Assembly (NCBI RefSeq): GCF_002571385.2
Contig: NW_019217784.1
Location: 977,218-1,041,217 of the forward strand
Direction: 5' to 3'
Length of the DNA stretch: 64,000 nucleotides
Source of the DNA: Stylophora pistillata
Taxonomy: Eukaryota
Shown: positions 7,901-53,326 of the stretch, one piece after another
Position numbering within the stretch: position 1 is the stretch's first letter
Layout: every line of letters begins with the position of its first letter
Translations under genes and position numbers: made by a program
Notes under the pieces: generated by a model
Database searches by the model: none
Told to the model about the DNA's origin: nothing
What the model saw: the letters and a program-made list of their open reading frames with translations, nothing else

Positions 7901-10900
7901 CCTCTTTTAGATCCCAGTCATCATCGCAAACTGTTCCCCACATGCCGGCGTAAAAAACTTCAACTCTTCCTTCTTGTTTACTATTGCCATCCACCAAACG
8001 AACCAAAGGTTTTTTCAGCTTTGATGGAAACAGGGAAGACACGGGTTTCATTTCACCACAATCCTCCACACATTTCATTCCCTCTGACGAAAAAGGGGAC
8101 ATTATTTTCGTGAACATAACGTTAATAAGACATTTCTGCGAATGAAAGAGGTCAGTAAACGGCTTCTTGCCATACGAGAGGAAAGTCAGTTCAACCCTCT
8201 ATGGAGATTATTTCCGTGTCCCTAACTTAAATCCTCCAACAGCTTTTTGCTTTTCTTTCTTTTCTTTCCTAAACACATCAAGAATAAAGTAGCCCGCGTT
8301 TTTTTTCTTTTTTTATATAGTAAAGCAGTGATGTTACTAAAAGTTCTGTTTCAATACTCACTAAGAAAAAGACCCTCACGGCAAGACTTGCACAAATTGT
8401 TCGTTTCCCCATTGTAGCACGATTGACACTGTTTGTCGCAAGGCTCACACTTCCGATTCTTGGTGTTCCCAAATTTACGAAACGGACATTCCTTTACGCA
8501 ATCCGAAAACTCCAAGAAATAGGGAGGATTACAGCTTGAGCACCGCTCTGCCTTACCAAGACACTCTTTGCACTGAGGCAGACAACGCTTGCACGTGTTT
8601 TTGGTGTCGTAGAAACCTGGTTCACAGTTGGACACACACCTTGTGGACAAATCAGGACCGGAGCATTTCACTCCGGCGTCTTCACTGTGGTGACAGTTGT
8701 GAGACCCAAATCCACCTTAAAAACAGTTTTGGAAGCGCGTTTACAACAACAAGCACTGTTAACAAATACCTGGGCTATTATGATAATCATGGCAAGATGA
8801 ATCTGAATCTTCAGGTGGAAAGCATGACATTCTGTTGGAGACCCGCAAGAGGAGGGGAAAGGAGTTGACAAAGTTGAGGTGAATGTCCATTGGATGGGGA
8901 TCTTATGAAAGCTAATTGTCGTAACTGTTTCGGTTGCAAATAAACTGGAAAACCTTCTATCCTTAGAGGTTTGCTACTCCAATGCGTATTAACCTTCAAA
9001 TGCTTCATTTGACCGGCGTAGTAACATCTCTCAGATACATAAACAAATCGTGAAATTTTGTTGATTCGGAAGGCAAGTGAAATATTTCGCTTATTTTTAA
9101 CGTTTCAAAAAGACATTAATCGATTTACTAAATTAGAAGTAAATTTTAAATTATAAGAACCACAAAAGAACGTCCGCTGTTCATACTTTTATACGGAAGC
9201 TGATATTTAACCGACTATTCGGGTAGTCAACTCTTGTAAATATATGCAAGTCATATATTTGAACTGCGGTTAAAGAACGAGTATGAGAGCGATCTTCGCA
9301 GTAATGAACACTACTTAAGCAGTAGTGAAAACGAAGCCTGAAAAAAATTCAGGCCTATACGGGACTCGAACCCATAACCTTTGCGAAACCGGTGTAGTGC
9401 TCTACAAACTGAGCTAACAAGCCAACTGGGAGCTGGTCATTATGTGGTGCATAATAAACCCGTGAAGTGATGAGTCAACGTTTGTGTATATGTATGCGAA
9501 TCCCGTGCAGGCCTGAATTTTTTTCAGGCCTCATTTTCACTACTGCTTAAGTAGTGTTCGTTACTACAAAGATCGTTCTCATACTTATTCGAGTAGTGAC
9601 ATGGTTCTCGAGCTCTCCCATTCATCTGTGCCGACTGATTCAACCTACCTGTATGAAAAGGACAATCTTGAAGTCTCCGTTCGTTACCAGTGCACTGAAT
9701 GTCATCCATCAATATTTTCCCAGTTCCCTGTCCGTATTTTGCAGAGTTGTAGGCGTAAATGGCTCCTCCCAATTTGAGCTGACGACATATCACCATTGCT
9801 TCTTTCATGTCGAAGCTATCATCGCATACTGTTCCCCATTCTCCCTGATAAAACAATTCAACGCGCCCTTCTGTCGAGGAGTTGACACCGACAAGTCTTA
9901 TGTTGGGGACACCGCTGACAATTTTATTTGCCTGGCGTGTGCAGTTCTCCACGCATGAATTTTCCAGGAGATGTTTACCGACTGGGCATTCGGTGCATTT
10001 GTTCCGTTTTTCGATGCAGTCCGAACAGGCAGGAGAGCAATCCAAACATATCCTAGTAGTGGGGTCTCCAAACTGTCCTCTTCTGCAATCAAAGACACAC
10101 GAACTGTAGTTTCCAGTTCTATTGAGGAACCTGTCCTTATCGCAGAGTGTGCAGTTTTCTGGCGTTCCAAGGCATTCGTTGCAGTTCGGACTACATCGAC
10201 CGCAGCTTCCATCCAGTGGATTTGTAAAATAACCTGAGGAACAGCTATCTAAGCAATCACGTGAGTGATCAGGACCCTTACAGACCACACCAGCGTCCTC
10301 GGTGTGGTCACAGTTTTCCTGTCCCCAGCCGAGGTGCTTGCATGCAAGTAACGATGACTCATTCCCTAAAATAGATATAAAGGTCCAAAGCCAGGTAATT
10401 ACCGGCAAACTGACGAACGATGAAAAGCCAGAGAGATCGACAGAAGGGGTTCACTAAACAACAGAAGAAAGGAATAGACCTGTACGTCTTGATTTAAGAC
10501 CTGAGCACCGGAACTAAAGGCCATTAAAGAGAAATTCAATGGCAGAAGGTAACTTACCAAAGCACTGAACTTCATCCAGCCAAATAGGCCCTTTTCCTGC
10601 TCCAAATCCGGCTCGGATGACCGATCGAGAAGCATTGCCCATGTTCAACATCCTACAAACAACTTGAGCATTCTGAATGTCCCAGGCGTCATCACACACT
10701 GTGCCGTATTTCCCATCATGAAGTAGCTGTCACGAAAATCACGCACACGAGTTAAAAAACAAAAACAACAACAACAACAACCACTAAAACAATACCTCCC
10801 CCTCCACCTAACTGTTCTTGGATTGTTTTGAATAGACATTGTCTGCTTTGGGCACAGTTTTTCCACATCGAAGCTCGAGAAAACTGCATGCTTCGCACAT

Positions 10901-34953: not shown

Positions 34954-37900
34954 ATGATCGGAGAGTCTGCAGTAGTGGTTGGGTGTAGTTTATACCTGAT
35001 TTGCAGTCAGTTTGAGTTGAAACAAAGCGCTGGTTACATCTTATTCCATATAACAGGTAGCCGCCACAGCCAATGGAAGATGCATTCCATGATCATATGA
35101 GTGAATATTTCTGGGGAATTATGATAATCGCAAATCTCGTTGTTTTGCTGGTCAATCTATGTAACATTTTAATCGCCTCTCGCTAACTTGGAAGAATGTT
35201 AACATCTAGTTTGCTCTCCATGGTTTTTGCTTTAGTATTATTGGTCGCTTGTATTCCTTCAGTGAAGTGGACTGCAGGGATAAGAAAATGGTTTCATTTA
35301 AGGTGAGTGACACTCGTGGTGTTTCCGTCCAGTACATGTTCGCCTGCGTTGATCAAACTGAATGGTTAGATCTTATTGAAACTGAGTATTTTAAGAAGCC
35401 TTTGTACAATAATTATTTAGGCCAATTGCTGGAGATGGCATGGAAATTGGTTCACTTCTAGTCCCCATGGTGATCACAAGTCAAATGGCATTTGTGGAGA
35501 AATGGGACAGTAAATATGTGTTTCTCAAAGTCACAGGTAACACCCAAGTTCATCACACTTACTCTAGGAGAGTCTTGTTTGTATTTGCAAAGCTGCTGAT
35601 AAACAGTTTTCCCAATTTTCTTCCTTAGAGGTAGAAAGATCCTATCTGTTAGCTTCTCAGTTGATGAGCATGTTCACTGCCTCCATTCTGCTGATTACAA
35701 ATCATGTAAAACCAGTGATGTCATCAGTCTTCTTTTTTATGGTCACGACCTGCATAGCAGCTACAATAAGCATTCATTTGGGTATGCACAGTTCATATTT
35801 TTAGATTATCCAAATTGAACATTGATGTTTTAGTTGTGATGGTTATATATAATTTTTTTTTTTTAACATAAACATGATAAATTATGGAAAAACTTTGTTG
35901 TTGGTGTTTCAAATTGCTCATGAGAGTATGATACATGATTCTCCGTTGTGCAAGGTAAATTAGCAGGATCAAAATGCCAGTTGTAGTGTTTGGTTGGTTA
36001 GAGGGATAAACCCAAAGAATGAACGATCAAGTGAGTAACTATGTATTGAGGCTATATTTTACATAGGTAACCCATGACAGTGACTGCATTTATATTGTAA
36101 TATGGAGTATACAATCTTTTTTATTACAGATGTTGATATTATGTGGGTGTCAGTAAGTGTTTCCCTATACTTTGTTGCTCTCTTTGCCATCTTGTGGTGG
36201 ATACCAGGATGTTTTACTATTGGTGAAGCCATGATTGTGACGCAAGCAGTTGTTTTTGTGACTATTGATTCATTTGCAAACTTAGGAATAAAGGTAAACA
36301 TGCATTTTTAGTTGAACATAGTTACAAGACAAGGATTAAGTGTCATTAGAAACAGGTTAAGGAATGCTAATCAAATTTTCAAGGAGTTATGTCTTGACTT
36401 TTTTCATAACCATTTTAGGCATGTACTGAAATTCAGAATGATCTGTTTTCAGTTAGCCTATCTTTCTCCTACCTTCTATAATTTGTTTGGAATTCATGCT
36501 GAAGCTACACGAGGAACTCTCACTTTGTGGATGCAGGTAACCCATAGCTTATTCATGTGATGTCTCTTTTATATGGCCCCTCATCTTTCTACCAATCAAT
36601 CTTCACTGGTCAAATTCAATCTAGCCCAACATAAAATTTGGTTCTGGAGAATACATGATCATGGGTTGTGTAAATGTCAGATATCCACTTATTACTTCTT
36701 AAGTCTATTAATTTTAATGTGTTGATTGTGTAGTCAAGGGATGCCTCATGCTGAAATATTTATGATTTTACATCCAGCTTTTGGTGGTTGGATCACTTAC
36801 AACAGGTCTTCTCCTTCTGCCAGTATTTTACTATCTTACATTAGTAAGGTGAGTCTTAATTTAGGAGATAACTTATAAGATAATCAACTTTTCAGGTCTG
36901 ATTTCCACTATTGCTCAAATAGTGCTTTACTGCGAAGGATCGTTCTCATATACGTCTCATAACCGCAGTTCACACATATGTTTCATATGTTTGTTGTTGT
37001 TATAAGATAATATTATATACTAGATAATTTATAACTTGATGTAAAGAAAAAGTGTTGTAAAAAACAACACAGGTTTGGTTAGTTACTCAAGTACATCAAG
37101 TTAGCCTTCTTGGTGAACAAAAATCTGTTTCATCTGTAAGTATTGTTTCTAGTACTGGATGGTGTGATAGTCTATCCCAGGTTATTTTAACCCTTTACAC
37201 CCTAACATTGGTATTTATGTTCTCCACACTGTTTGCTCCCTTTACCTTTTGTATGGTACTAAAAAGAAGAATTTGTGTGATAATCAGGAGCAATTCTTAA
37301 TTTGGTTATCATTGCCTTTATTCTCGTAACCTTTACATTTGAGTTTAAGGGTCATACTGTAGGGAGAAATGAGAAGTCAGACACTGTCAGGGGGGGGTTA
37401 AGGGGTTAAACATCATCTTTGTGTGGTTCATTAATAATAATAGTTTGTTAATTTATAGTTTTGAGTTTGCTTCTAAATTGTAAGAGTTGGGAGAGAAAAA
37501 AGCATCTTTCAGAACAGAGAATTGTGTCACTGGTGGTAACTGTCAGATGTAGGTGATTGTCTTTGTGTTATCTTACTTAGCTGTCAGAGTAGATAATCAT
37601 CCTTATGGTAGTGCAAAACTTCTGTTCTGGGGTGAACCTAATTTTTAATCAGTTATTCACAGATTGTGTTTGGTTTTTAGGGACTATTGGGAGAGAGTAA
37701 CTGGTTACATGGCATTCTATGCTGTGTTGTTCTTTACATTCTTTGCTCTGCTGTTGCCATGGTCTGTGCTCATTTTGGGGGGCATTAATCCATTTGTGTG
37801 GCTGTGGGACTATTTAGACTTTGGGGACATTAGGGTAAGCTGCCCATGAACCATGAAACATCTACAAATTGTTAAAGTACCGTTTTGTATCCAGCAGTCA

Positions 37901-47500: not shown

Positions 47501-50500
47501 TTCAGATGAAGAAAGTTATTCTGAACCTTATGACCTTGGCAAAGTCACATTGTTAGATGAGCAAGCTAAGAGAATGTCTCTGAGGGGAATGCGTCCATCT
47601 GTAGATGAACAGGAGGAAGACAGATTCAGGAAGCACAGTGAAACTGGTGTCAAAAAGTAAACATTTTGATCTGTAATTAGTTGTCTTTTTTTGCTATCAG
47701 ATTATGGTATCTTAAATTTGTAATCCAATGAATTTAACCAAGATCACTCTGCATTTATGCCCAATCACCAGACAAGTTCAAAACAAAATAATCACTTTTG
47801 TCGAGTCCATTCTTGAATAACAAAAGTACATACCAAAGGGGCCATTATGATACTGTGATTGGACCAAAAAACTAAACTTAAATTATTTCTTAACATTATT
47901 TTTTCATTTGTGTTCTTATCAGTTGTATTGCTTGACAACTTGCATTTGTACTCTTGATGACAAACCATGTGACAATCAGCCATGTTCATTTGATTTTGTC
48001 ACTCAGTGCTTGTTGCAAATTTTCTTTTGCCTTAGTGAACTATAACATTCAGTGTCCTTTATTACATGTAGTTAAATTGAGTAGTTGAAAGAAAAGACGT
48101 ATTGTCTTTTTTTTTAACTCAAAAACACATTGTGTATATAATTATACTTTGTCTTACCCTTTAATGTCCATTTTTTTAATAGACAGCAGTCTCCCAGCAG
48201 GGATCAGAGACCAGCAGATGATTATGACTCACCTTGGGAAAGTAAATCTTTTCTAGGAATGCAGCATAAATCTCCAAACTTACCCCAAGAGAGACCTCAA
48301 GCTCCTGTGACTGACATGCGCCCATCTGATGATTATGACAAACCCTGGGAGTGGAACAAGAATATTAATCTGAATGGCCATACACAAGTTCCAAGACAAC
48401 AGGAACCTGTTCAGTCACCTAAAATAGATGCACGACCCCCAGATGACTATGATGCTCCTTGGGAGTGGTCAAAATCTGGTGTTGCATCAAGGGTCAAGGT
48501 TCCAAGGGAAGGAGAAGCACAGGTAACAGGGTGCTCTGTTGCCCCTTCTAAGCCACCAAGAACATTTGGTGGAGATGGATCCCCTATTGATCCCGCTTTG
48601 CCACTGGCGCAACAGGGGTAAGTTGTATGAATGAATTGTTATTCCCTGTGGAAAAGGTGTCCTAGATTGTGAATGTTGTACTTGCTATGGCAAGTAGAAT
48701 AAAGTTTTTTCATTAAATTTTTGGGTGACCATTTTATGATTTTAGGTCTCCAAATTTTGACTCAACCCTTTAATTTCTAATAGTGACTTGCTTCTAATTT
48801 CTCCTTACAATTTTATGATCCTTGAATCACACATAGAGGTGACAAGAATAAAGGAAATGATCACCCAGTGAAGAAGCTCCTGATGGTTAAATGAATTCTC
48901 CTTGTCAGCTCCATAGGAAATGTAAAGAAAACAGTCTGGAGAATGTGCATACTGATGTTGGGGTGTAAACTTGAGCTTTGAGCCCAGGAGTAAGTTTGAG
49001 TGTTGTTTGTATTGTCTTTGTCCTGATCATTAATTTTTATGTTTCAATCTTAAAATACAGCTGGTATCATGGACCTTTAAAGCGACTGGAAGCAGAGAGA
49101 CTCCTACAATCTGCTGAAGACTGCAGCTTCCTACTGCGACAATCAGAGAGTAGTAAAAATGACTTCTCTCTGTCTGTCAAGTAAGGATTTGTTTATATTA
49201 GTTATTGTCTCTTTACTGTTTTTTCAATAGTAATAGTAATAGTAATAAGTTTATAAGAACGATCCTTCGCAGTAAAGCACTATTTGAGCAATAGTGGAAA
49301 TCAGACCTGAAAAAAATTTCAGGCCTGTACGGGATTCGAACCACTGACCTCTGCGATACTAGTGCAGCGCTCTACCAATTGAGCTAACAAGCCAACTGGG
49401 AGCAGGCCATCAAATTAATTCGATATAAACCCGTAGATGATAAATCGAACAACAACAAACATATGAAACATATGAGTGAACTGCGGTTATGAGACGTATA
49501 TAAGAACGATCCTTCGCAGTAAAGCACTATTTGAGCAATAGTGGAAATCAGACCTGAAAAAAATTTCAGGCCTGTACGGGATTCGAACCACTGACCTCTG
49601 CGATACTAGTGCAGCGCTCTACCAATTGAGCTAACAAGCCAACTGGGAGCAGGCCATCAAATTAATTCGATATAAACCCGTAGATGATAAATCGAACAAC
49701 AACAAACATATGAAACATATGAGTGAACTGCGGTTATGAGACGTATATAAGAACGATCCTTCGCAGTAAAGCACTATTTGAGCAATAGTGGAAATCAGAC
49801 CTGAAAAAAATTTCAGGCCTGTACGGGATTCGAACCACTGACCTCTGCGATACTAGTGCAGCGCTCTACCAATTGAGCTAACAAGCCAACTGGGAGCAGG
49901 CCAGTTGGCTTGTTAGCTTGTTAGTTGTTAGCTTGTTGGCTTGTTAGTTGACTATCCAAGAATTATGGATAGTGGAGAAAACTTATAGCGTTTCTTCGAC
50001 CAACTTCTCTTCTAAAGGGCTCTGAAAAATATTGACTTTGTCAAAATCTAAACACTAACCAGGGGTTTTCGGAATGTTGATGAAGTATTTTTTCGTTATG
50101 ATTGTAGCCCTGGTTTGCCGAGCCTTTCCGTCCTTGCAGTTTGATCTCATGTGTTCGACCGCCTGCCAGAACATGAGAGGAGCCTCGCTTTGTTTGTCGG
50201 ATAAGTAACGTTTGAACCATATAATNTGTTTGTTGTTGTTCGATTTATCATCTACGGGTTTATATCGAATTAATTTGATGGCCTGCTCCCAGTTGGCTTG
50301 TTAGCTCAATTGGTAGAGCGCTGCACTAGTATCGCAGAGGTCAGTGGTTCGAATCCCGTACAGGCCTGAAATTTTTTTCAGGTCTGATTTCCACTATTGC
50401 TCAAATAGTGCTTTACTGCGAAGGATCGTTCTTATATACGTCTCATAACCGCAGTTCACTCATATGTTTCATATGTTTGTTGTTGTTCGATTTATCATCT

Positions 50501-53326
50501 ACGGGTTTATATCGAATTAATTTGATGGCCTGCTCCCAGTTGGCTTGTTAGCTCAATTGGTAGAGCGCTGCACTAGTATCGCAGAGGTCAGTGGTTCGAA
50601 TCCCGTACAGGCCTGAAATTTTTTTCAGGTCTGATTTCCACTATTGCTCAAATAGTGCTTTACTGCGAAGGATCGTTCTTATATACGTCTCATAACCGCA
50701 GTTCACTCATATGTTTCATATGTTTGTTGTTGTTCGATTTATCATCTACGGGTTTATATCGAATTAATTTGATGGCCTGCTCCCAGTTGGCTTGTTAGCT
50801 CAATTGGTAGAGCGCTGCACTAGTATCGCAGAGGTCAGTGGTTCGAATCCCGTACAGGCCTGAAATTTTTTTCAGGTCTGATTTCCACTATTGCTCAAAT
50901 AGTGCTTTACTGCGAAGGATCGTTCTTATATACGTCTCATAACCGCAGTTCACTCATATGTTTCATATGTTTGTTGTTGTTCGATTTATCATCTACGGGT
51001 TTATATCGAATTAATTTGATGGCCTGCTCCCAGTTGGCTTGTTAGCTCAATTGGTAGAGCGCTGCACTAGTATCGCAGAGGTCAGTGGTTCGAATCCCGT
51101 ACAGGCCTGAAATTTTTTTCAGGTCTGATTTCCACTATTGCTCAAATAGTGCTTTACTGCGAAGGATCGTTCTTATATACGTCTCATAACCGCAGTTCAC
51201 TCATATGTTTCATATGTTTGTTGTTGTTCGATTTATCATCTACGGGTTTATATCGAATTAATTTGATGGCCTGCTCCCAGTTGGCTTGTTAGCTCAATTG
51301 GTAGAGCGCTGCACTAGTATCGCAGAGGTCAGTGGTTCGAATCCCGTACAGGCCTGAAATTTTTTTCAGGTCTGATTTCCACTATTGCTCAAATAGTGCT
51401 TTACTGCGAAGGATCGTTCTTATATACGTCTCATAACCGCAGTTCACTCATATGTTTCATATGTTTGTTGTTGTTCGATTTATCATCTACGGGTTTATAT
51501 CGAATTAATTTGATGGCCTGCTCCCAGTTGGCTTGTTAGCTCAATTGGTAGAGCGCTGCACTAGTATCGCAGAGGTCAGTGGTTCGAATCCCGTACAGGC
51601 CTGAAATTTTTTTCAGGTCTGATTTCCACTATTGCTCAAATAGTGCTTTACTGCGAAGGATCGTTCTTATATACGTCTCATAACCGCAGTTCACTCATAT
51701 GTTTCATATGTTTGTTGTTGTTCGAGTAATAAGTTTATTGAACACTCCCTGAAAGGGTTTTTCAGTGAACAGTACAATACAATAACAATAAAAGATATAC
51801 ATGTATAGTAAAAAATATAAAACTATATGTTAAAAACTATTTTGTTGTAAGAAACTCATTCAACATTCTTGATTTTAAAGTTTTCTTAAAGTTAGTGAGG
51901 TGACTTTACACAGTTTCAAATCACTGTCTAACGAGTTCCATAATTTTACCATCCTATAGTGAAACGATCCCTGACCAGCAGGGGTTTTAAAGAAAGGAAT
52001 ATTAAGTTGTTAAGAGTTTCTTGTTATTCGGTCAGATATCTGTCTTCTTGTGGCAAACTGTGACATCAGATAGGTCGGGGCACGGTCCATCATGCACCTG
52101 AATGCAAGAATAGCATCTCAGAAGTCAGAAGTTAACCTGCTTTTTTATGAGGAGCCACTCCAATTTCTTAAGTGATGGAGTTATATGTTCAAATTTCTTT
52201 ACACCACTAACTATCTGAGCTGCGAAGTTCTGAACAATTTGTAATTTTTGCATATTACTGGCAGAGATGTTAGACCAGACTGAAGAGCAATAGTATAATT
52301 TGCTGAAAACAAGCATTTGCCTGACTGATCTGAGCCAATATACTCATGCAAGATGAGACTGTCACTGAGATGTGATTGTTGAATAACCGCCACCCAGTTA
52401 GCCCAATGGATAGTGGGCTGTACTGTTGTGCGGGAGGGTTCGAGCTAGACCAACACTAAGATCTTAAAATAATTGAGAAGAACTTGCTACCTTTCTTTTA
52501 CATCAAGAAATGGTTAGATATTCTAGTCTTCTCGGATAGGGACGAATAAATGGAGGTCCCGTCTCCTGCAGGGTTGGGGTAGAAAACGTTAATTTCCCAC
52601 AGACGAGATTACTGTGTGATGGATGTCCTCCCCTGGGGTGATGGGGTGGGGTGGGTACAAAAGGGGTTAGGTGTCAATTGGGAAGAAAGTTCTGTTCCTT
52701 TCTCCTGCCATTCCCATGGCAAATGAATTAAATTCTTAATTCTTAAAATTCTTAATTCGTAAATGACAAAGTAGGGTCGAATGTTAACTCAAGAGCCTTG
52801 ACAGACTCAATGCAAGTTAAGAATTTACTTTGCCTTGAACTTACTGAGAATTTTTGTTTTTTTTTAATTAATATGTTTTACATTCTGAAATCATTATTTC
52901 ATGAGGAACATTAGGGAATTCCAAACAAAGTTCTCAAATAGTGTTTTGGTTTCATTTTGTTGTCACTCTGATAAGTACAGGTAAGTTGAGCACAACTTTA
53001 CAACAACCAACCCTTGTTTTGGCTCTGAGTTTGAGTTACCTTAAGTGAAAGCTCATTGCCCACTTCATCAATGTAAATTTTTTTCCATTTTATTTCCACT
53101 TAGAAATAACAACTCCTTCATGCATCTAAAGATTGTTTGCCAAGGCAACAAATACATCTTGGGACAATTTAGTAAGCCATTCAATACTGTGCCAGAAATG
53201 ATTCACTACTATTCCCTAAACAAGCTTAACATTCGAGGAGCTGAACACAAAAAACTGTTACATCCAGTGGTGCCCCCCCCTGAATATTTTACACTGGAGC
53301 CTGGTGGATATTCCACAGCAAGCTGA
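41506..53326 (+). CDS. SH2-domain adaptor of the SHB/SHD/SHE/SHF family
   Basis: Exons 41506-41865, 47265-47656, 48183-48617, 49061-49180, 53104-53326. N-terminal PPKPPRRDY; repeated YxxPW(D/E); IDPALPLAQQG-WYHGPLKRLEAERLL..FLLRQSES..FSLSV..FMHLKI..YILGQFSKPF.TVPEMIHYY..KLNIRGAEH..LLHPV. Confidence 0.92.
43503..43650 (+). mobile_element. 3' fragment related to the tRNA-SINE at 55352
   Basis: GTAGGAGACGTTAATTTCCCACACACGAGATTACTGTG..TGTCCTCCC shared with 55563-55620; A-rich tail. Confidence 0.7.
44897..45180 (+). repeat. Recent direct duplication of ~130 bp (offset 154 bp)
   Basis: 44897-45026 identical to 45051-45180. Confidence 0.9.
50060..50225 (-). pseudogene. Stray RGS-domain-like exon fragment with splice donor and intron sequence
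   Basis: 55 open codons IIWFKRYLSDKQSEAPLMFWQAVEHMRSNCKDGKARQTRATIITKKYFINIPKTP, then G|GTTAGT; matches the RGS pattern F..FL..E.SE..L.FW.AVE....A..I..KY. Confidence 0.65.
50295..50366 (+). tRNA. tRNA-Thr(AGT)-like pseudo-tRNA module. Also at 50542, 50789, 51036, 51283, 51530 (+) and 49322-49393, 49569-49640, 49816-49887 (-).
   Basis: 72 nt; 7-bp acceptor stem GGCTTGT/ACAGGCC; D arm GCTC/GAGC; loop CTAGTAT; A box TAGCTCAATTGG; B box GGTTCGAATCC; T7 run just downstream. The T stem has two mismatches, so it is unlikely to be a translational tRNA. Confidence 0.55.
51725..52320 (-). mobile_element. 5'-truncated LINE (L2/CR1-like) 3' fragment; its (ATTACT)n tail continues at 49227-49254 on the other side of the array
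   Basis: LVFSKLYYCSSVWSN..KLQIVQNFAAQIVSG.KKFEHITPSLKKLEWL is a typical ORF2 C-terminus; AATAAA before the tail. Confidence 0.85.
52385..52650 (+). mobile_element. Degenerate copy of the tRNA-SINE at 55352
   Basis: AACCGCC.CCC.GTTAGC.CA.TGG head and body (CTAGTCTTCTCGGATA.GGACGAATAAA..CCCGTCTCCTGCAG) shared with 55352-55690. Confidence 0.8.

What the first reader, a model, noticed from the sequence alone, without database searches (positions are those of the whole stretch)
49241..51738. Multimeric, inverted tRNA-module retroelement inserted as one event: a possible ribozyme-free retrozyme-like system
Seen: nine apparently identical tRNA-like modules in 247-bp units, with the tRNA in mid-unit (not at the 5' end as in a SINE). 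Each is followed by CCTGAAA-T7-CAGG and further hairpins. The left ~2.6 units are inverted. One 14-bp TSD (AGTAATAAGTTTAT) brackets the whole array, and removing it restores the tail of the adjacent LINE. I found no hammerhead core in either strand. Known: retrozymes and Penelope-dependent elements insert as tandem or inverted multimers, proposed to arise by rolling-circle reverse transcription of small circular RNAs that are monomerised by ribozymes. Inference: this may be an analogous non-autonomous element in which the tRNA-like fold supplies a Pol III promoter and/or an RNase P/Z cleavage site instead of a ribozyme. Caveat: an N at 50226 makes the copy number and centre uncertain.
Basis: partly seen in the sequence, partly recalled or inferred. 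Interest (0 to 1): 0.8.

Follow-up and report, generated by a model that had tools for sequence, protein, structure and literature searches.

The report
tRNA-bearing repeat inserted Penelope-style
A 247-bp coral repeat built around a degenerate tRNA-like gene was copied into a gene intron as one block with two opposed arms, in the manner of Penelope-like retrotransposons but without their ribozyme; its helper enzyme and RNA form are unknown.

Summary
Window 49241-51738 (Stylophora pistillata) is one insertion between two copies of a 14-bp target duplication. It has a minus arm (49252-49903) and a plus arm (50227-51725) of identical 247-bp units, nine tRNA-Thr(AGT)-like modules, and no hammerhead or other Rfam ribozyme.

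The unit count, the 100% identity and the centre are not reliable. The assembly is Illumina-only and gap-filled. Window 49792-50225 is identical to another locus (C332), and that identity stops at the N.

It is a mobile family: at least 282 units in at least 32 contigs. Outer ends fall at two fixed unit positions, B (about 212) and A (about 14, which is B plus a 49-nt "tail"). All 8 complete two-armed insertions here, and 6 of 6 in an independent metagenome of a coral of unknown species, have one A end and one B end. TSDs are 9-14 bp where readable. Tandem copies, an inverted 5'-truncated arm and a tail at one end only are the published signature of Penelope-like elements.

Best reading: a hammerhead-free, tRNA-module-bearing passenger of Penelope-type reverse transcription. 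The helper was not found. RNase P/Z monomerisation is not supported, and circular RNA is untested. Other agents of this scan reached the same reading on other arrays of this family.

The parts
49241..49254 (.). Left copy of the 14-bp target-site duplication (AGTAATAAGTTTAT). Its last 3 nt (TAT) are also readable as unit sequence.
49252..49903 (-). Inverted arm, 2.64 units as assembled. Its outer (sense-3') end is at unit pos 210-212, a B-type end. Only the flank-proximal part is firmly anchored.
49321..49393 (-). tRNA-Thr(AGT)-like module 1
49568..49640 (-). tRNA-like module 2
49815..49887 (-). tRNA-like module 3
49792..50225 (.). Centre: last 112 nt of the minus arm, an 18-nt snap-back (49901-49918), stuttered GTTAGCTT-like filler (49904-49947) and 278 nt of non-unit DNA. 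It is 100% identical to locus C332, so it is probably a gap-filling mis-extension and not part of this insertion.
50226..50226 (.). Single N (assembly join). Not filled.
50227..51725 (+). Direct arm, 6.07 units as assembled. Its outer (sense-3') end is at unit pos 16/17, an A-type end that includes the 49-nt tail.
   Evidence: a contig of run X12 crosses the right junction with 28 + 43 nt, short of the tool's 31-nt bridging rule
50295..50367 (+). tRNA-like module 4
50542..50614 (+). tRNA-like module 5 (in the reference unit). A box TAGCTCAATTGG and B box GGTTCGAATCC. Two T-stem pairs and one anticodon-stem pair are non-standard.
50789..50861 (+). tRNA-like module 6
51036..51108 (+). tRNA-like module 7
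51283..51355 (+). tRNA-like module 8
51530..51602 (+). tRNA-like module 9
50527..50541 (+). Reference unit: 15-nt leader. Unit pos 54 (window 50527) is the recurrent sense-5' end of arrays.
   Evidence: broader cluster 9-15 nt upstream of the module in the metagenome coral
50612..50629 (+). Hairpin CCTGAAA/TTTCAGG enclosing a T7 run (50619-50625), which looks like a Pol III terminator. It is conserved in all subfamilies.
50639..50657 (+). 7-bp stem-loop (unit pos 166-184). Two pairs changed on both sides in older subfamilies, and 100% of cells are paired.
50686..50734 (+). 49-nt 'tail' (unit pos 213-247 plus 1-14) between site B (50685|50686) and site A (50734|50735). It is present at only one outer end of every complete two-armed insertion.
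50735..50773 (+). 39-nt linker (unit pos 15-53), seen only inside multimers or in arms longer than one unit.
51725..51738 (.). Right copy of the 14-bp TSD
36889..37001 (+). Separate older insertion of the same family. It is a 113-nt 5'-truncated monomer (unit pos 149 to 14, A end) with 2 substitutions, 4 nt of filler, and the TSD ATAAGATAAT at 36875-36884 and 37002-37011.
9238..9583 (.). Separate old two-armed insertion of a 79-83% identical subfamily. The minus arm is one unit long and tail-bearing (its A-type outer end, with the subfamily's own tail, reaches to about 9228). The plus arm is B-ended. The TSD is about 13 bp with 2 mismatches.

Best explanation
This is one insertion of a non-coding, non-autonomous retroelement family of corals.

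Unit anatomy. The unit is about 247-250 bp. In order it holds a 15-nt leader, a degenerate tRNA-derived module with intact A and B boxes, a hairpin holding a T7 run, a conserved stem-loop, priming site B, a 49-nt tail, priming site A and a 39-nt linker.

How it inserts. A multimeric (or circular) RNA of tRNA sense is copied into DNA at a staggered chromosomal break by target-primed reverse transcription. This leaves a 9-14-bp target duplication. Both exposed target 3' ends prime. One starts at site A and the other at site B, which lies 49 nt upstream of A. The result is two head-to-head arms with sense-3' ends pointing outward and the tail at one end only. This geometry is the one described for Penelope-like elements (PLEs), which are abundant in this genome. 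The reverse transcriptase/endonuclease is therefore most likely borrowed from a PLE.

Role of the tRNA module. The element has no hammerhead. The module most likely serves as a Pol III promoter or as a structural/5'-end-defining element, not as a working tRNA.

Shown:
- the insertion, its TSD and its arm polarity;
- fixed A and B ends, and the rule that a two-armed insertion has one of each;
- family mobility and 5' truncation;
- absence of known ribozymes;
- presence of the same family and the same rules in a second coral assembly.

Inferred:
- an RNA intermediate;
- a PLE helper;
- two-site priming on one RNA;
- promoter function.

The assembled copy number (nine) and the centre of this array are not reliable.
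For: 1. One event. A 14-bp TSD brackets arms of opposite polarity.

2. Family. At least 282 full units in at least 32 contigs among the listed matches.

3. Ends in 20 further S. pistillata arrays:
- Outer ends fall at unit pos 8-19 (mostly 14) or 206-214 (mostly 212/213).
- Every complete two-armed insertion has one of each. With 12-14-bp TSDs these are the window array, L033, L035, L036, L045, L046 and L034. The old pair at window 9238-9583 also fits.
- L037 fits too, but its TSD is hidden by an N.

4. Independent replication in JGI coral metagenome contigs (species unknown). These carry a 250-bp relative that is 73-93% identical to the young unit.
- 3' ends peak at the B homologue (37) and at B + about 51 nt (26).
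- All 6 complete two-armed insertions have one A end and one B end. Five have 9-13-bp TSDs; the sixth lies in microsatellite.

5. Reverse-transcription hallmarks:
- 5'-truncated copies with TSD and filler;
- snap-back and stuttered template-switch fillers at inner junctions;
- a tail-only inverted arm in L050, and a 30-nt tail fragment in L097.

6. Literature. [quoted passage not shown] Non-autonomous PLE derivatives give multicopy head-to-tail insertions. Naiad and Chlamys PLEs lack hammerheads (PMC8557442).

7. PLEs are present. There are 149 matches, all over the GIY-YIG cut-off, several as close inverted pairs and several groups with identical scores. PLE RT fragments were found in my own loci.

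8. No ribozyme found.

9. The module is not a working tRNA. It has three non-standard stem pairs. The anticodon is AGT in the young subfamily but reads CGG (by eye) in old and metagenome copies, while the A/B boxes and T-run are kept.

10. Selection on RNA structure. Two compensatory pair changes in the stem-loop at pos 166-184.
Against: - No helper was identified. No PLE with a 3' end matching the unit was found, and the HHR-bearing PLE 3' regions I could read (L123, L087, L173) share nothing with it.
- The conserved T7 run should stop Pol III before sites B and A. A Pol III transcript from pos 54 cannot easily be the multimeric template.
- No RNA evidence. RNA-seq contigs cover the unit no more, relative to the flank, than DNA runs do.
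- One array (L031) has its 5' end fused to the 5' half of an APE-type LINE ORF2, which hints at a LINE ribonucleoprotein.
- Inner junctions and arm lengths come from a gap-filled short-read assembly and may be wrong, as the window's centre is.
- The other agents' notes in this scan that reach the same reading are not independent evidence.
Confidence: 0.7

Rival explanations
1. A retrozyme analogue with a circular or unit-length RNA. Array transcripts are cut at fixed sites (14|15 and 212|213) by an unrecognised self-cleaving fold or a host nuclease. Unit-length RNAs are then ligated into circles, and a PLE reverse transcriptase copies them by rolling circle, giving the multimers. This shares the PLE helper with the best explanation and differs in the form of the template.
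For: - Sites A and B serve as sense-5' ends as well as sense-3' ends.
- Some arms are whole numbers of units: exactly 2.0 units from 15 to 14 (L046), 1.0 unit (window 9238-9480) and 16.03 units (L042).
- Some arms start at 213: L037, and the tail-only arm in L050.
- Arrays are perfectly periodic, up to about 16 units as assembled.
- The unit RNA folds far better than shuffles, z = -5.3.
- Hammerhead retrozymes of corals work this way (PMC7229834).
Against: - No ribozyme at E<=10 and no hammerhead core.
- The N^CG context of both sites in S. pistillata is not kept in the metagenome coral.
- A circle has no 5' end, yet 5' ends recur at pos 53/54 with snap-backs.
- There are only a handful of integer-length arms, and arm lengths are assembly-dependent.
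- No RNA data.
Confidence: 0.12
2. An ordinary tRNA-derived SINE moved by a stringent-type LINE. The enzyme recognises the 3' stem-loop and the (GTT)n tail, and the inversions come from twin priming.
For: - tRNA-derived head with A/B boxes.
- 5' ends cluster just upstream of the module.
- The 3' end at a (GTT)3-4 microsatellite varies by slippage (pos 8-19).
- 5'-truncated monomers with TSDs exist.
- L031 is a chimera with an APE-LINE ORF2.
- This insertion sits in what looks like the tail of a LINE.
Against: - Twin priming picks the second site by microhomology, so it would vary. Here the second end is site B or A in 14 of 14 insertions, with little or no microhomology to the target.
- Multicopy tandem blocks and a one-sided tail are reported as PLE-specific.
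- The L031 LINE family has no near-identical copies. The next best are 87-92% at the amino-acid level, so it is not recently active.
- An internal T7 run is atypical for a SINE.
Confidence: 0.12
3. DNA-level origin. Rolling-circle or extrachromosomal circular DNA copies of a tRNA-gene repeat were captured at staggered breaks, or local tandem amplification was followed by inversion.
For: - Tandem plus inverted structure.
- Palindromic inner junctions, as in L037.
Against: - Dozens of dispersed insertions share the same two fixed termini and have variable 9-14-bp TSDs.
- 5'-truncated copies carry filler.
- Polarity is strict: sense-3' ends always point outward.
- No transposase-type fixed TSD and no terminal inverted repeats.
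Confidence: 0.04
4. A cluster of genuine tRNA-Thr genes, or purely an assembly artefact of a high-copy repeat.
For: - Each unit has a tRNA call followed by a terminator-like T7 run.
- The assembly is short-read and gap-filled, and the centre is demonstrably borrowed from another locus.
Against: - Three non-standard stem pairs, and an anticodon that changes between subfamilies.
- The TSD and both flank-anchored junctions are unique sequence.
- A contig of run X12, possibly the genome's own source sample, reaches 28 nt into the unit across the right junction. This is short of the tool's 31-nt bridging rule.
- The same architecture appears in an unrelated metagenome assembly.
Confidence: 0.03

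Closest known systems
Non-autonomous derivatives of Penelope-like elements, e.g. non-autonomous Chlamys/MRC1 of Chlamydomonas (Craig et al. 2021, PMC8557442)
   Same: - No ORF.
- Multicopy head-to-tail insertions.
- Inverted 5'-truncated partner.
- Tail at one end only.
- Variable TSD.
- No hammerhead in the Naiad/Chlamys lineages.
   Different: - Those elements share their 3' ends with identified autonomous PLEs. Here no helper is known.
- None is described with a tRNA-derived Pol III-type module.
- The host is an animal (a coral).
Metazoan non-LTR retrozymes (Cervera & de la Pena 2020, PMC7229834; Li et al. 2026 preprint 10.64898/2026.07.22.740005)
   Same: - Tandem units of 170-400 bp and low GC.
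- TSDs, when present, are longer than the 4 bp of plant retrozymes.
- Abundant in corals.
- Thought to be PLE passengers.
   Different: - The defining type I hammerhead is absent.
- A tRNA-like module and a T-run stand in the unit instead.
- Circular RNA has not been shown.
Sm-alpha / Sj-alpha SINE-like elements of schistosomes (Ferbeyre et al. 1998, cited in PMC2770079)
   Same: - A tRNA-derived, Pol III-type head in a short, high-copy element. The cited paper reports them being scored as thousands of tRNA pseudogenes and bearing a hammerhead.
- From my own knowledge, not checked here: they are partly tandem.
   Different: - Sm-alpha carries an active hammerhead. This element has none.
- The insertion geometry of Sm-alpha was not compared here.
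TRIMp3: Helenus and Cassandra (Kojima 2024, PMC10886601)
   Same: - Non-autonomous retroelements whose repeated part carries a small-RNA-gene-derived Pol III promoter and terminator.
- Tandem arrays occur.
- The small-RNA part is judged not to encode a functional RNA.
   Different: - They are LTR elements with a primer-binding site and polypurine tract and integrase-type 4-5-bp TSDs.
- Here TSDs are 9-14 bp, arms are inverted, and there are no LTR termini.
tRNA-derived SINEs with LINE partners
   Same: - tRNA-derived head, body, and a microsatellite-like 3' end.
- 5' truncation and TSDs.
   Different: - Inserts as multimers.
- Has two fixed alternative 3' ends used one per arm.
- Has an internal T7 run.
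- No LINE partner was found.

Membership tests
PLE-mobilised non-autonomous element | Partial or multiple head-to-tail tandem copies made at insertion | tested here: met
   Arrays of 0.5 to about 16 units lie between TSDs. Unit numbers depend on the assembly.
PLE-mobilised non-autonomous element | Adjacent inverted 5'-truncated copy | tested here: met
   Head-to-head arms in the window and in L033-L037, L045-L047 and L050, and in metagenome loci.
PLE-mobilised non-autonomous element | 30-40-bp 'tail' extension at only one end of the insertion | tested here: met
   The tail is 49 nt in S. pistillata and about 51 nt in the metagenome coral. All 14 complete two-armed insertions (8 + 6) have it on one side only.
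PLE-mobilised non-autonomous element | Variable-length TSD from staggered nicks | tested here: met
   TSDs of 9-14 bp.
PLE-mobilised non-autonomous element | 3' end or pLTR similarity to an autonomous PLE of the same genome | not testable with these tools
   PLE loci of this genome were located but could not be fetched. The three PLE 3' regions from other assemblies show no similarity.
Non-LTR retrozyme | Type I hammerhead ribozyme in each unit | tested here: not met
   No CUGANGA core on either strand. No Rfam ribozyme at E<=10.
Non-LTR retrozyme | Abundant unit-length circular RNA | not testable with these tools
   Only assembled contigs of runs were available.
tRNA-derived SINE (LINE-dependent) | tRNA-derived head with A and B boxes near the 5' end | tested here: met
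   Rfam tRNA at 48.9 bits. 5' ends lie 15 nt upstream of the module, or 9-15 nt upstream in the second coral.
tRNA-derived SINE (LINE-dependent) | 3' end shared with a partner LINE, and monomeric insertion | tested here: inconclusive
   No LINE with a matching 3' end was seen. The only LINE physically joined to an array belongs to an old family. Most insertions are multimers.
TRIMp3 / Helenus | LTRs with PBS/PPT and 4-5-bp TSDs | tested here: not met
   TSDs are 9-14 bp, arms are inverted, and there are no TG..CA termini.
Functional tRNA-Thr gene array | Canonical cloverleaf and conserved anticodon | tested here: not met
   Three non-standard stem pairs. The anticodon differs between subfamilies.

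The most novel reading that the evidence does not exclude
The two fixed sites 49 nt apart are a built-in pair of start points. The two halves of a Penelope-type integration complex use them on one and the same RNA, one target DNA end at each site. This would explain the long-puzzling tail and inverted copy of all PLE insertions. In addition, unit-length RNAs bounded by these sites would arise without any ribozyme and could circularise. The family would then be a ribozyme-free counterpart of retrozymes, and a 250-nt model substrate for PLE integration.
Probability: 0.15. Interest if true: 0.85.

Novelty: new variant of a known kind. Interest (0 to 1): 0.6.

Why it matters
How Penelope-like elements integrate is unsolved. 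The published literature calls for an in vitro system and cannot explain their tandem and inverted copies or the one-sided tail.

This family reduces that puzzle to a roughly 250-nt non-coding unit. It has two sharply defined priming sites and a strict rule of one A end and one B end per two-armed insertion, seen 14 times out of 14 in two assemblies. That gives a small, testable substrate.

It also shows that retrozyme-like amplification in animals does not need a hammerhead. A tRNA-derived Pol III-type module can ride on this machinery, which matters for tRNA gene annotation in corals: thousands of false tRNA-Thr or tRNA-Pro calls are likely.

For this locus, the practical points are these:
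- The insertion sits in the intron that splits the SH2 domain of a host gene.
- It may be polymorphic.
- Its assembled interior should not be trusted.

Tried and rejected
- Hammerhead and other ribozymes: regex search and Rfam at E<=10 found none.
- RNase P/Z ends at the cloverleaf: no end at pos 69 or 141/142 in S. pistillata. An alternative acceptor-like helix (54-59 with 135-140) that could put RNase P at 53|54 is not kept in the old subfamily (by eye), so I dropped it.
- 'N^CG' as a shared cut-site motif: it holds in S. pistillata but not in the metagenome coral, so I dropped it.
- The centre as a 5' transduction from C332: rejected. The C332 copy is a diverged 0.8-unit remnant, whereas the window arm is the young consensus, and the identity stops at the N.
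- The L031 LINE as helper: its family is old.
- PLE fragments near arrays in L044 and L050 as helper 5' regions: the DNA between array and fragment is unrelated in the two loci, and the ORFs are decayed.
- PLE 3' regions in L123, L087, L077 and L173 show no similarity to the unit. Those of L123 and L087 carry hammerhead-like motifs.
- First metagenome scan, with a tail word: 0 hits.
I did not try to get them another way.
- Read laying returned only short assembled contigs. They gave no RNA starts or ends and no expression signal above the DNA level.
- The third protein search, both atlas searches, and the structure and complex tools were not used. They would not bear on a non-coding element.
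Full report
**1. What is in the window**

ARAGORN finds nine tRNA-Thr(AGT) calls. Three are on the minus strand (49321-49887) and six on the plus strand (50295-51602). Rfam scores each at 48.9 bits and marks one anticodon-stem pair and two T-stem pairs as non-standard. TRF gives a 247-bp period, 2.6 copies at 49252-49903 and 6.1 copies at 50227-51725, with 100% matches. The two blocks are perfect inverted repeats. The word AGTAATAAGTTTAT occurs at 49241-49254 and at 51725-51738, directly outside the two blocks. Each module is followed after 5 nt by a T7 run inside a CCTGAAA/TTTCAGG hairpin. There is no CUGANGA core on either strand. Rfam reports nothing but tRNA at E<=1 over 3 kb, and at E<=10 over two units.

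**2. How far the assembled sequence can be trusted**

A protein search identified the genome. A gene model on contig C519 is 'AWC38_SpisGene18968 [Stylophora pistillata]'. That assembly is Illumina-only: ALLPATHS-LG followed by SSPACE and three rounds of GapFiller (PMC5730576). A 247-bp repeat present in hundreds of copies cannot be resolved by such data. Single Ns sit in or beside many arrays.

In the window, 49792-50225 is 100% identical to contig C332 (L051 1345-1778). This stretch comprises the last 112 nt of the minus arm, an 18-nt snap-back, a stuttered filler and 278 nt of non-unit DNA. At C332 an older, diverged 0.8-unit copy has the same end and then continues into unique flank. In the window the identity stops exactly at the N at 50226.

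I read the centre as a gap-filling extension that followed the wrong path. Consequently, 'nine modules', '100% identical' and the arm lengths are estimates. The two outer junctions, the polarity of the arms and the TSD are anchored in unique flank and stand. A contig of DNA run X12 crosses the right junction with 28 nt on the unit side and 43 on the flank, just short of the tool's 31-nt bridging rule. X12 may be the genome's own source sample. I did not fill the N.

**3. It is a mobile family with fixed ends**

One unit finds at least 282 full-length 100% matches in at least 32 contigs among the listed rows. I fetched 20 arrays and mapped each base to a unit coordinate, taking window 50474 as pos 1.

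Outer ends are always sense-3' ends. They fall in two places:
- **Site A**, after the (GTT)n run. It lies at pos 8-19, mostly at pos 14.
- **Site B**, after CGTTCTTATATA. It lies at pos 206-214, mostly at 212/213.

A equals B plus 49 nt.

Every complete two-armed insertion has one A end and one B end. The window array, L033, L035, L036, L045, L046 and L034 do so with exact 12-14-bp TSDs. An old two-armed insertion of a 79-83% identical subfamily at window 9238-9583 does so as well, with a roughly 13-bp TSD carrying 2 mismatches. L037 also fits, but an N hides its TSD. If the two ends were chosen independently, eight out of eight would have a probability of at most 0.004.

One-armed arrays end at A or B on one side and are 5'-truncated on the other. 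Window 36889-37001 is such a copy: 113 nt, pos 149 to 14, with 4 nt of filler and a 10-bp TSD. There is little or no microhomology between the target and the unit at A or B. The start points are therefore set by the element, not by chance annealing.

**4. Sense-5' ends**

Six independent 5' ends lie at pos 53/54, 15 nt upstream of the module:
- L031 and L041;
- two old copies in L034;
- L035 and the C332/window copy, both with snap-back hairpins.

Others lie exactly next to the priming sites:
- At pos 15: L046, an arm of exactly 2.0 units, and the old window copy, exactly 1.0 unit.
- At pos 213: L037, and L050, whose inverted arm is the 49-nt tail alone.
- L042 is 16.03 units long.

Inner junctions carry stuttered, strand-switching fillers (L047, L034, L036). 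These are typical of reverse-transcriptase template switching. Their placement is less secure than that of the outer ends.

**5. Independent replication**

A 23-nt word spanning the leader and the start of the module hit more than 120 contigs of JGI coral metagenomes, mostly Ga0126336. The coral species is not known. The contigs carry a 250-bp relative, 73-93% identical to the young S. pistillata unit over the module region. It has the same order of parts, and its anticodon reads CGG instead of AGT.

Mapped onto that unit:
- 3' ends peak at the B homologue (37 ends) and at B + about 51 nt (26 ends).
- 5' ends are spread out, with an excess 9-15 nt upstream of the module.
- All six complete two-armed insertions (L067, L086, L107, L116, L112, L118) have one A end and one B end. 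Five have TSDs of 9-13 bp. The sixth lies in microsatellite.
- Several one-armed copies have 9-11-bp TSDs.

The geometry is therefore not an artefact of the S. pistillata assembly. The family is older than the species.

**6. What it is**

Variable TSDs, 5' truncation, filler, snap-backs and strict 3'-outward polarity point to target-primed reverse transcription of a tRNA-sense RNA.

The published description of PLE insertions fits point by point (PMC8557442). It lists partial tandems, an inverted 5'-truncated copy next to them, and a 30-40-bp tail at only one end. It states that this is not seen with LINE-type TPRT. [quoted passage not shown]

Corals carry Hydra, Naiad, Neptune and Poseidon PLEs (preprint 10.64898/2026.07.22.740005). 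This genome has 149 GIY-YIG matches, all over the cut-off, many in close inverted pairs and in groups with identical scores. I also found PLE RT fragments in my own loci.

I therefore read the element as a passenger of a PLE. It resembles a retrozyme in life style but has a tRNA-derived module where retrozymes have a hammerhead.

**7. How it may work (inferred)**

The simplest account of the A/B rule, and of tail-only arms, is as follows. The two 3' ends of the staggered target break prime on the same RNA, at two built-in start sites 49 nt apart. The A-primed cDNA either stops after 49 nt, where the B-primed complex sits, or gets past it or switches template. The first outcome gives the tail. 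The second gives the inverted 5'-truncated arm. This is a hypothesis, not a result.

The template must be multimeric or circular, because the arrays include the 39-nt linker that lies beyond site A.

The module is not a working tRNA. Its stems are imperfect and its anticodon drifts, while the A/B boxes, the leader and the T-run are conserved. A promoter or 5'-end-defining role fits the 5'-end cluster. However, the conserved T7 run should terminate Pol III before B and A. That contradiction is unresolved.

A stem-loop at pos 166-184 shows two compensatory pair changes. This suggests selection on the structure of the longer RNA.

**8. Rivals**

- **LINE-dependent SINE with twin priming.** It explains the head, the microsatellite-like A end and one LINE chimera (L031). 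It does not explain the fixed second site, the multimers or the one-sided tail. That LINE family is also old.
- **DNA-based spread.** It does not fit the polarity, the truncations or the variable TSDs.
- **A true tRNA gene cluster, or a pure artefact.** Sections 2 to 5 exclude both.
It remains open. The integer-length arms speak for unit-length molecules, and the recurrent 5' end at pos 54 speaks against a pure circle. No RNA-level data were available.

**9. Helper search**

PLE copies that I could read from other assemblies share nothing with the unit. These were L123, L087 and L077 in the metagenome and L173 from ENA. L123 and L087 carry hammerhead-like motifs (by eye). Old PLE fragments about 0.7-1 kb from two S. 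pistillata arrays (L044, L050) proved unrelated to each other in the intervening DNA. The helper is unknown.

**10. Context**

The insertion lies in the intron that splits an SH2 domain. The exon at 49062-49181 matches SH2 positions 1-41. The ORF at 53045-53326 holds positions 40-77, though below Pfam's cut-off (E 0.044, 14.3 bits). The insertion sits in what looks like the 3' tail of a minus-strand LINE remnant.

A 194-nt contig of RNA-seq run X4 aligns from 51725 (the first TSD base) rightward and then continues into unlike sequence. An empty allele would look like this. The evidence is suggestive only.

**11. Relation to earlier work of this scan**

Several first-stage notes and four or five follow-up reports on other arrays of this family reached the same 'Penelope-style, hammerhead-free, helper unknown' reading. 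I had formed that reading before seeing the follow-ups. They are not independent evidence.

This report adds the following:
- the one-A-one-B rule and its replication in a second assembly;
- the use of the same sites as 5' ends;
- the artefactual centre of this array;
- the assembly caveat;
- the negative tests of RNase P/Z and of the LINE as helper.

Noticed in passing
window 36875-37011: A 113-nt 5'-truncated monomer of the same family (unit pos 149 to 14). It has 2 substitutions, 4 nt of filler (CAAC) and a 10-bp TSD, ATAAGATAAT.
   Followed up: yes
window 9238-9583: An old two-armed insertion of a 79-83% identical subfamily. Its anticodon loop reads CGG instead of AGT and its T stem pairs better. 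Its minus arm is exactly one unit long.
   Followed up: partly
L031 1067-2739 (G000 C519): The 5' end of an 8.84-unit array (unit pos 54) is joined directly to the EN plus 5'-RT half of an APE-type LINE ORF2. No TSD is visible and the LINE does not continue on the other side. This could be a template-switch chimera or a deletion.
   Followed up: partly
L036 4010-4076 (G000 C322): In one unit the leader plus tRNA module (pos 54-134) is replaced by 67 nt of unrelated sequence, with a break again at 53|54.
   Followed up: no
L047 5489-5557 (G000 C145): An inner junction is filled by five stuttered repeats of a roughly 15-nt chimera of minus- and plus-strand unit sequence. This looks like repeated strand switching.
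   Followed up: no
L123 780-2400 and L087 5798-6490 (metagenome Ga0126336): Decayed PLE copies with a C-terminal EN and a hammerhead-like CUGACGA...GAAA motif in the 3' region. In L087 the PLE 3' end abuts an inverted unit broken inside its tRNA module.
   Followed up: partly
L173 278-6941 (ENA ERZ25071797): A bona fide PLE as a head-to-head inverted pair (98% identical arms) with ORFs carrying Pfam DUF8422 and HTH_animal. It would be useful for comparing end geometry.
   Followed up: no
window 49062-49181 and 53045-53326: Two exons encoding the two halves of an SH2 domain. The intron between them holds the array and a LINE remnant (ORF 52125-52316, minus strand).
   Followed up: partly
L079 7743-9230 (metagenome Ga0126336): A 496-aa ORF with Helitron_like_N and DUF6570 domains in the same coral metagenome contig set.
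   Followed up: no
G000 C762:117330-120266, C174:197137-198668, C129:251795-252719, C491:76349-77207, C136:534437-535250: GIY-YIG matches in close pairs or triplets of opposite strand with identical scores. These are probably young PLE insertions with inverted arms and are candidates for the helper.
   Followed up: no
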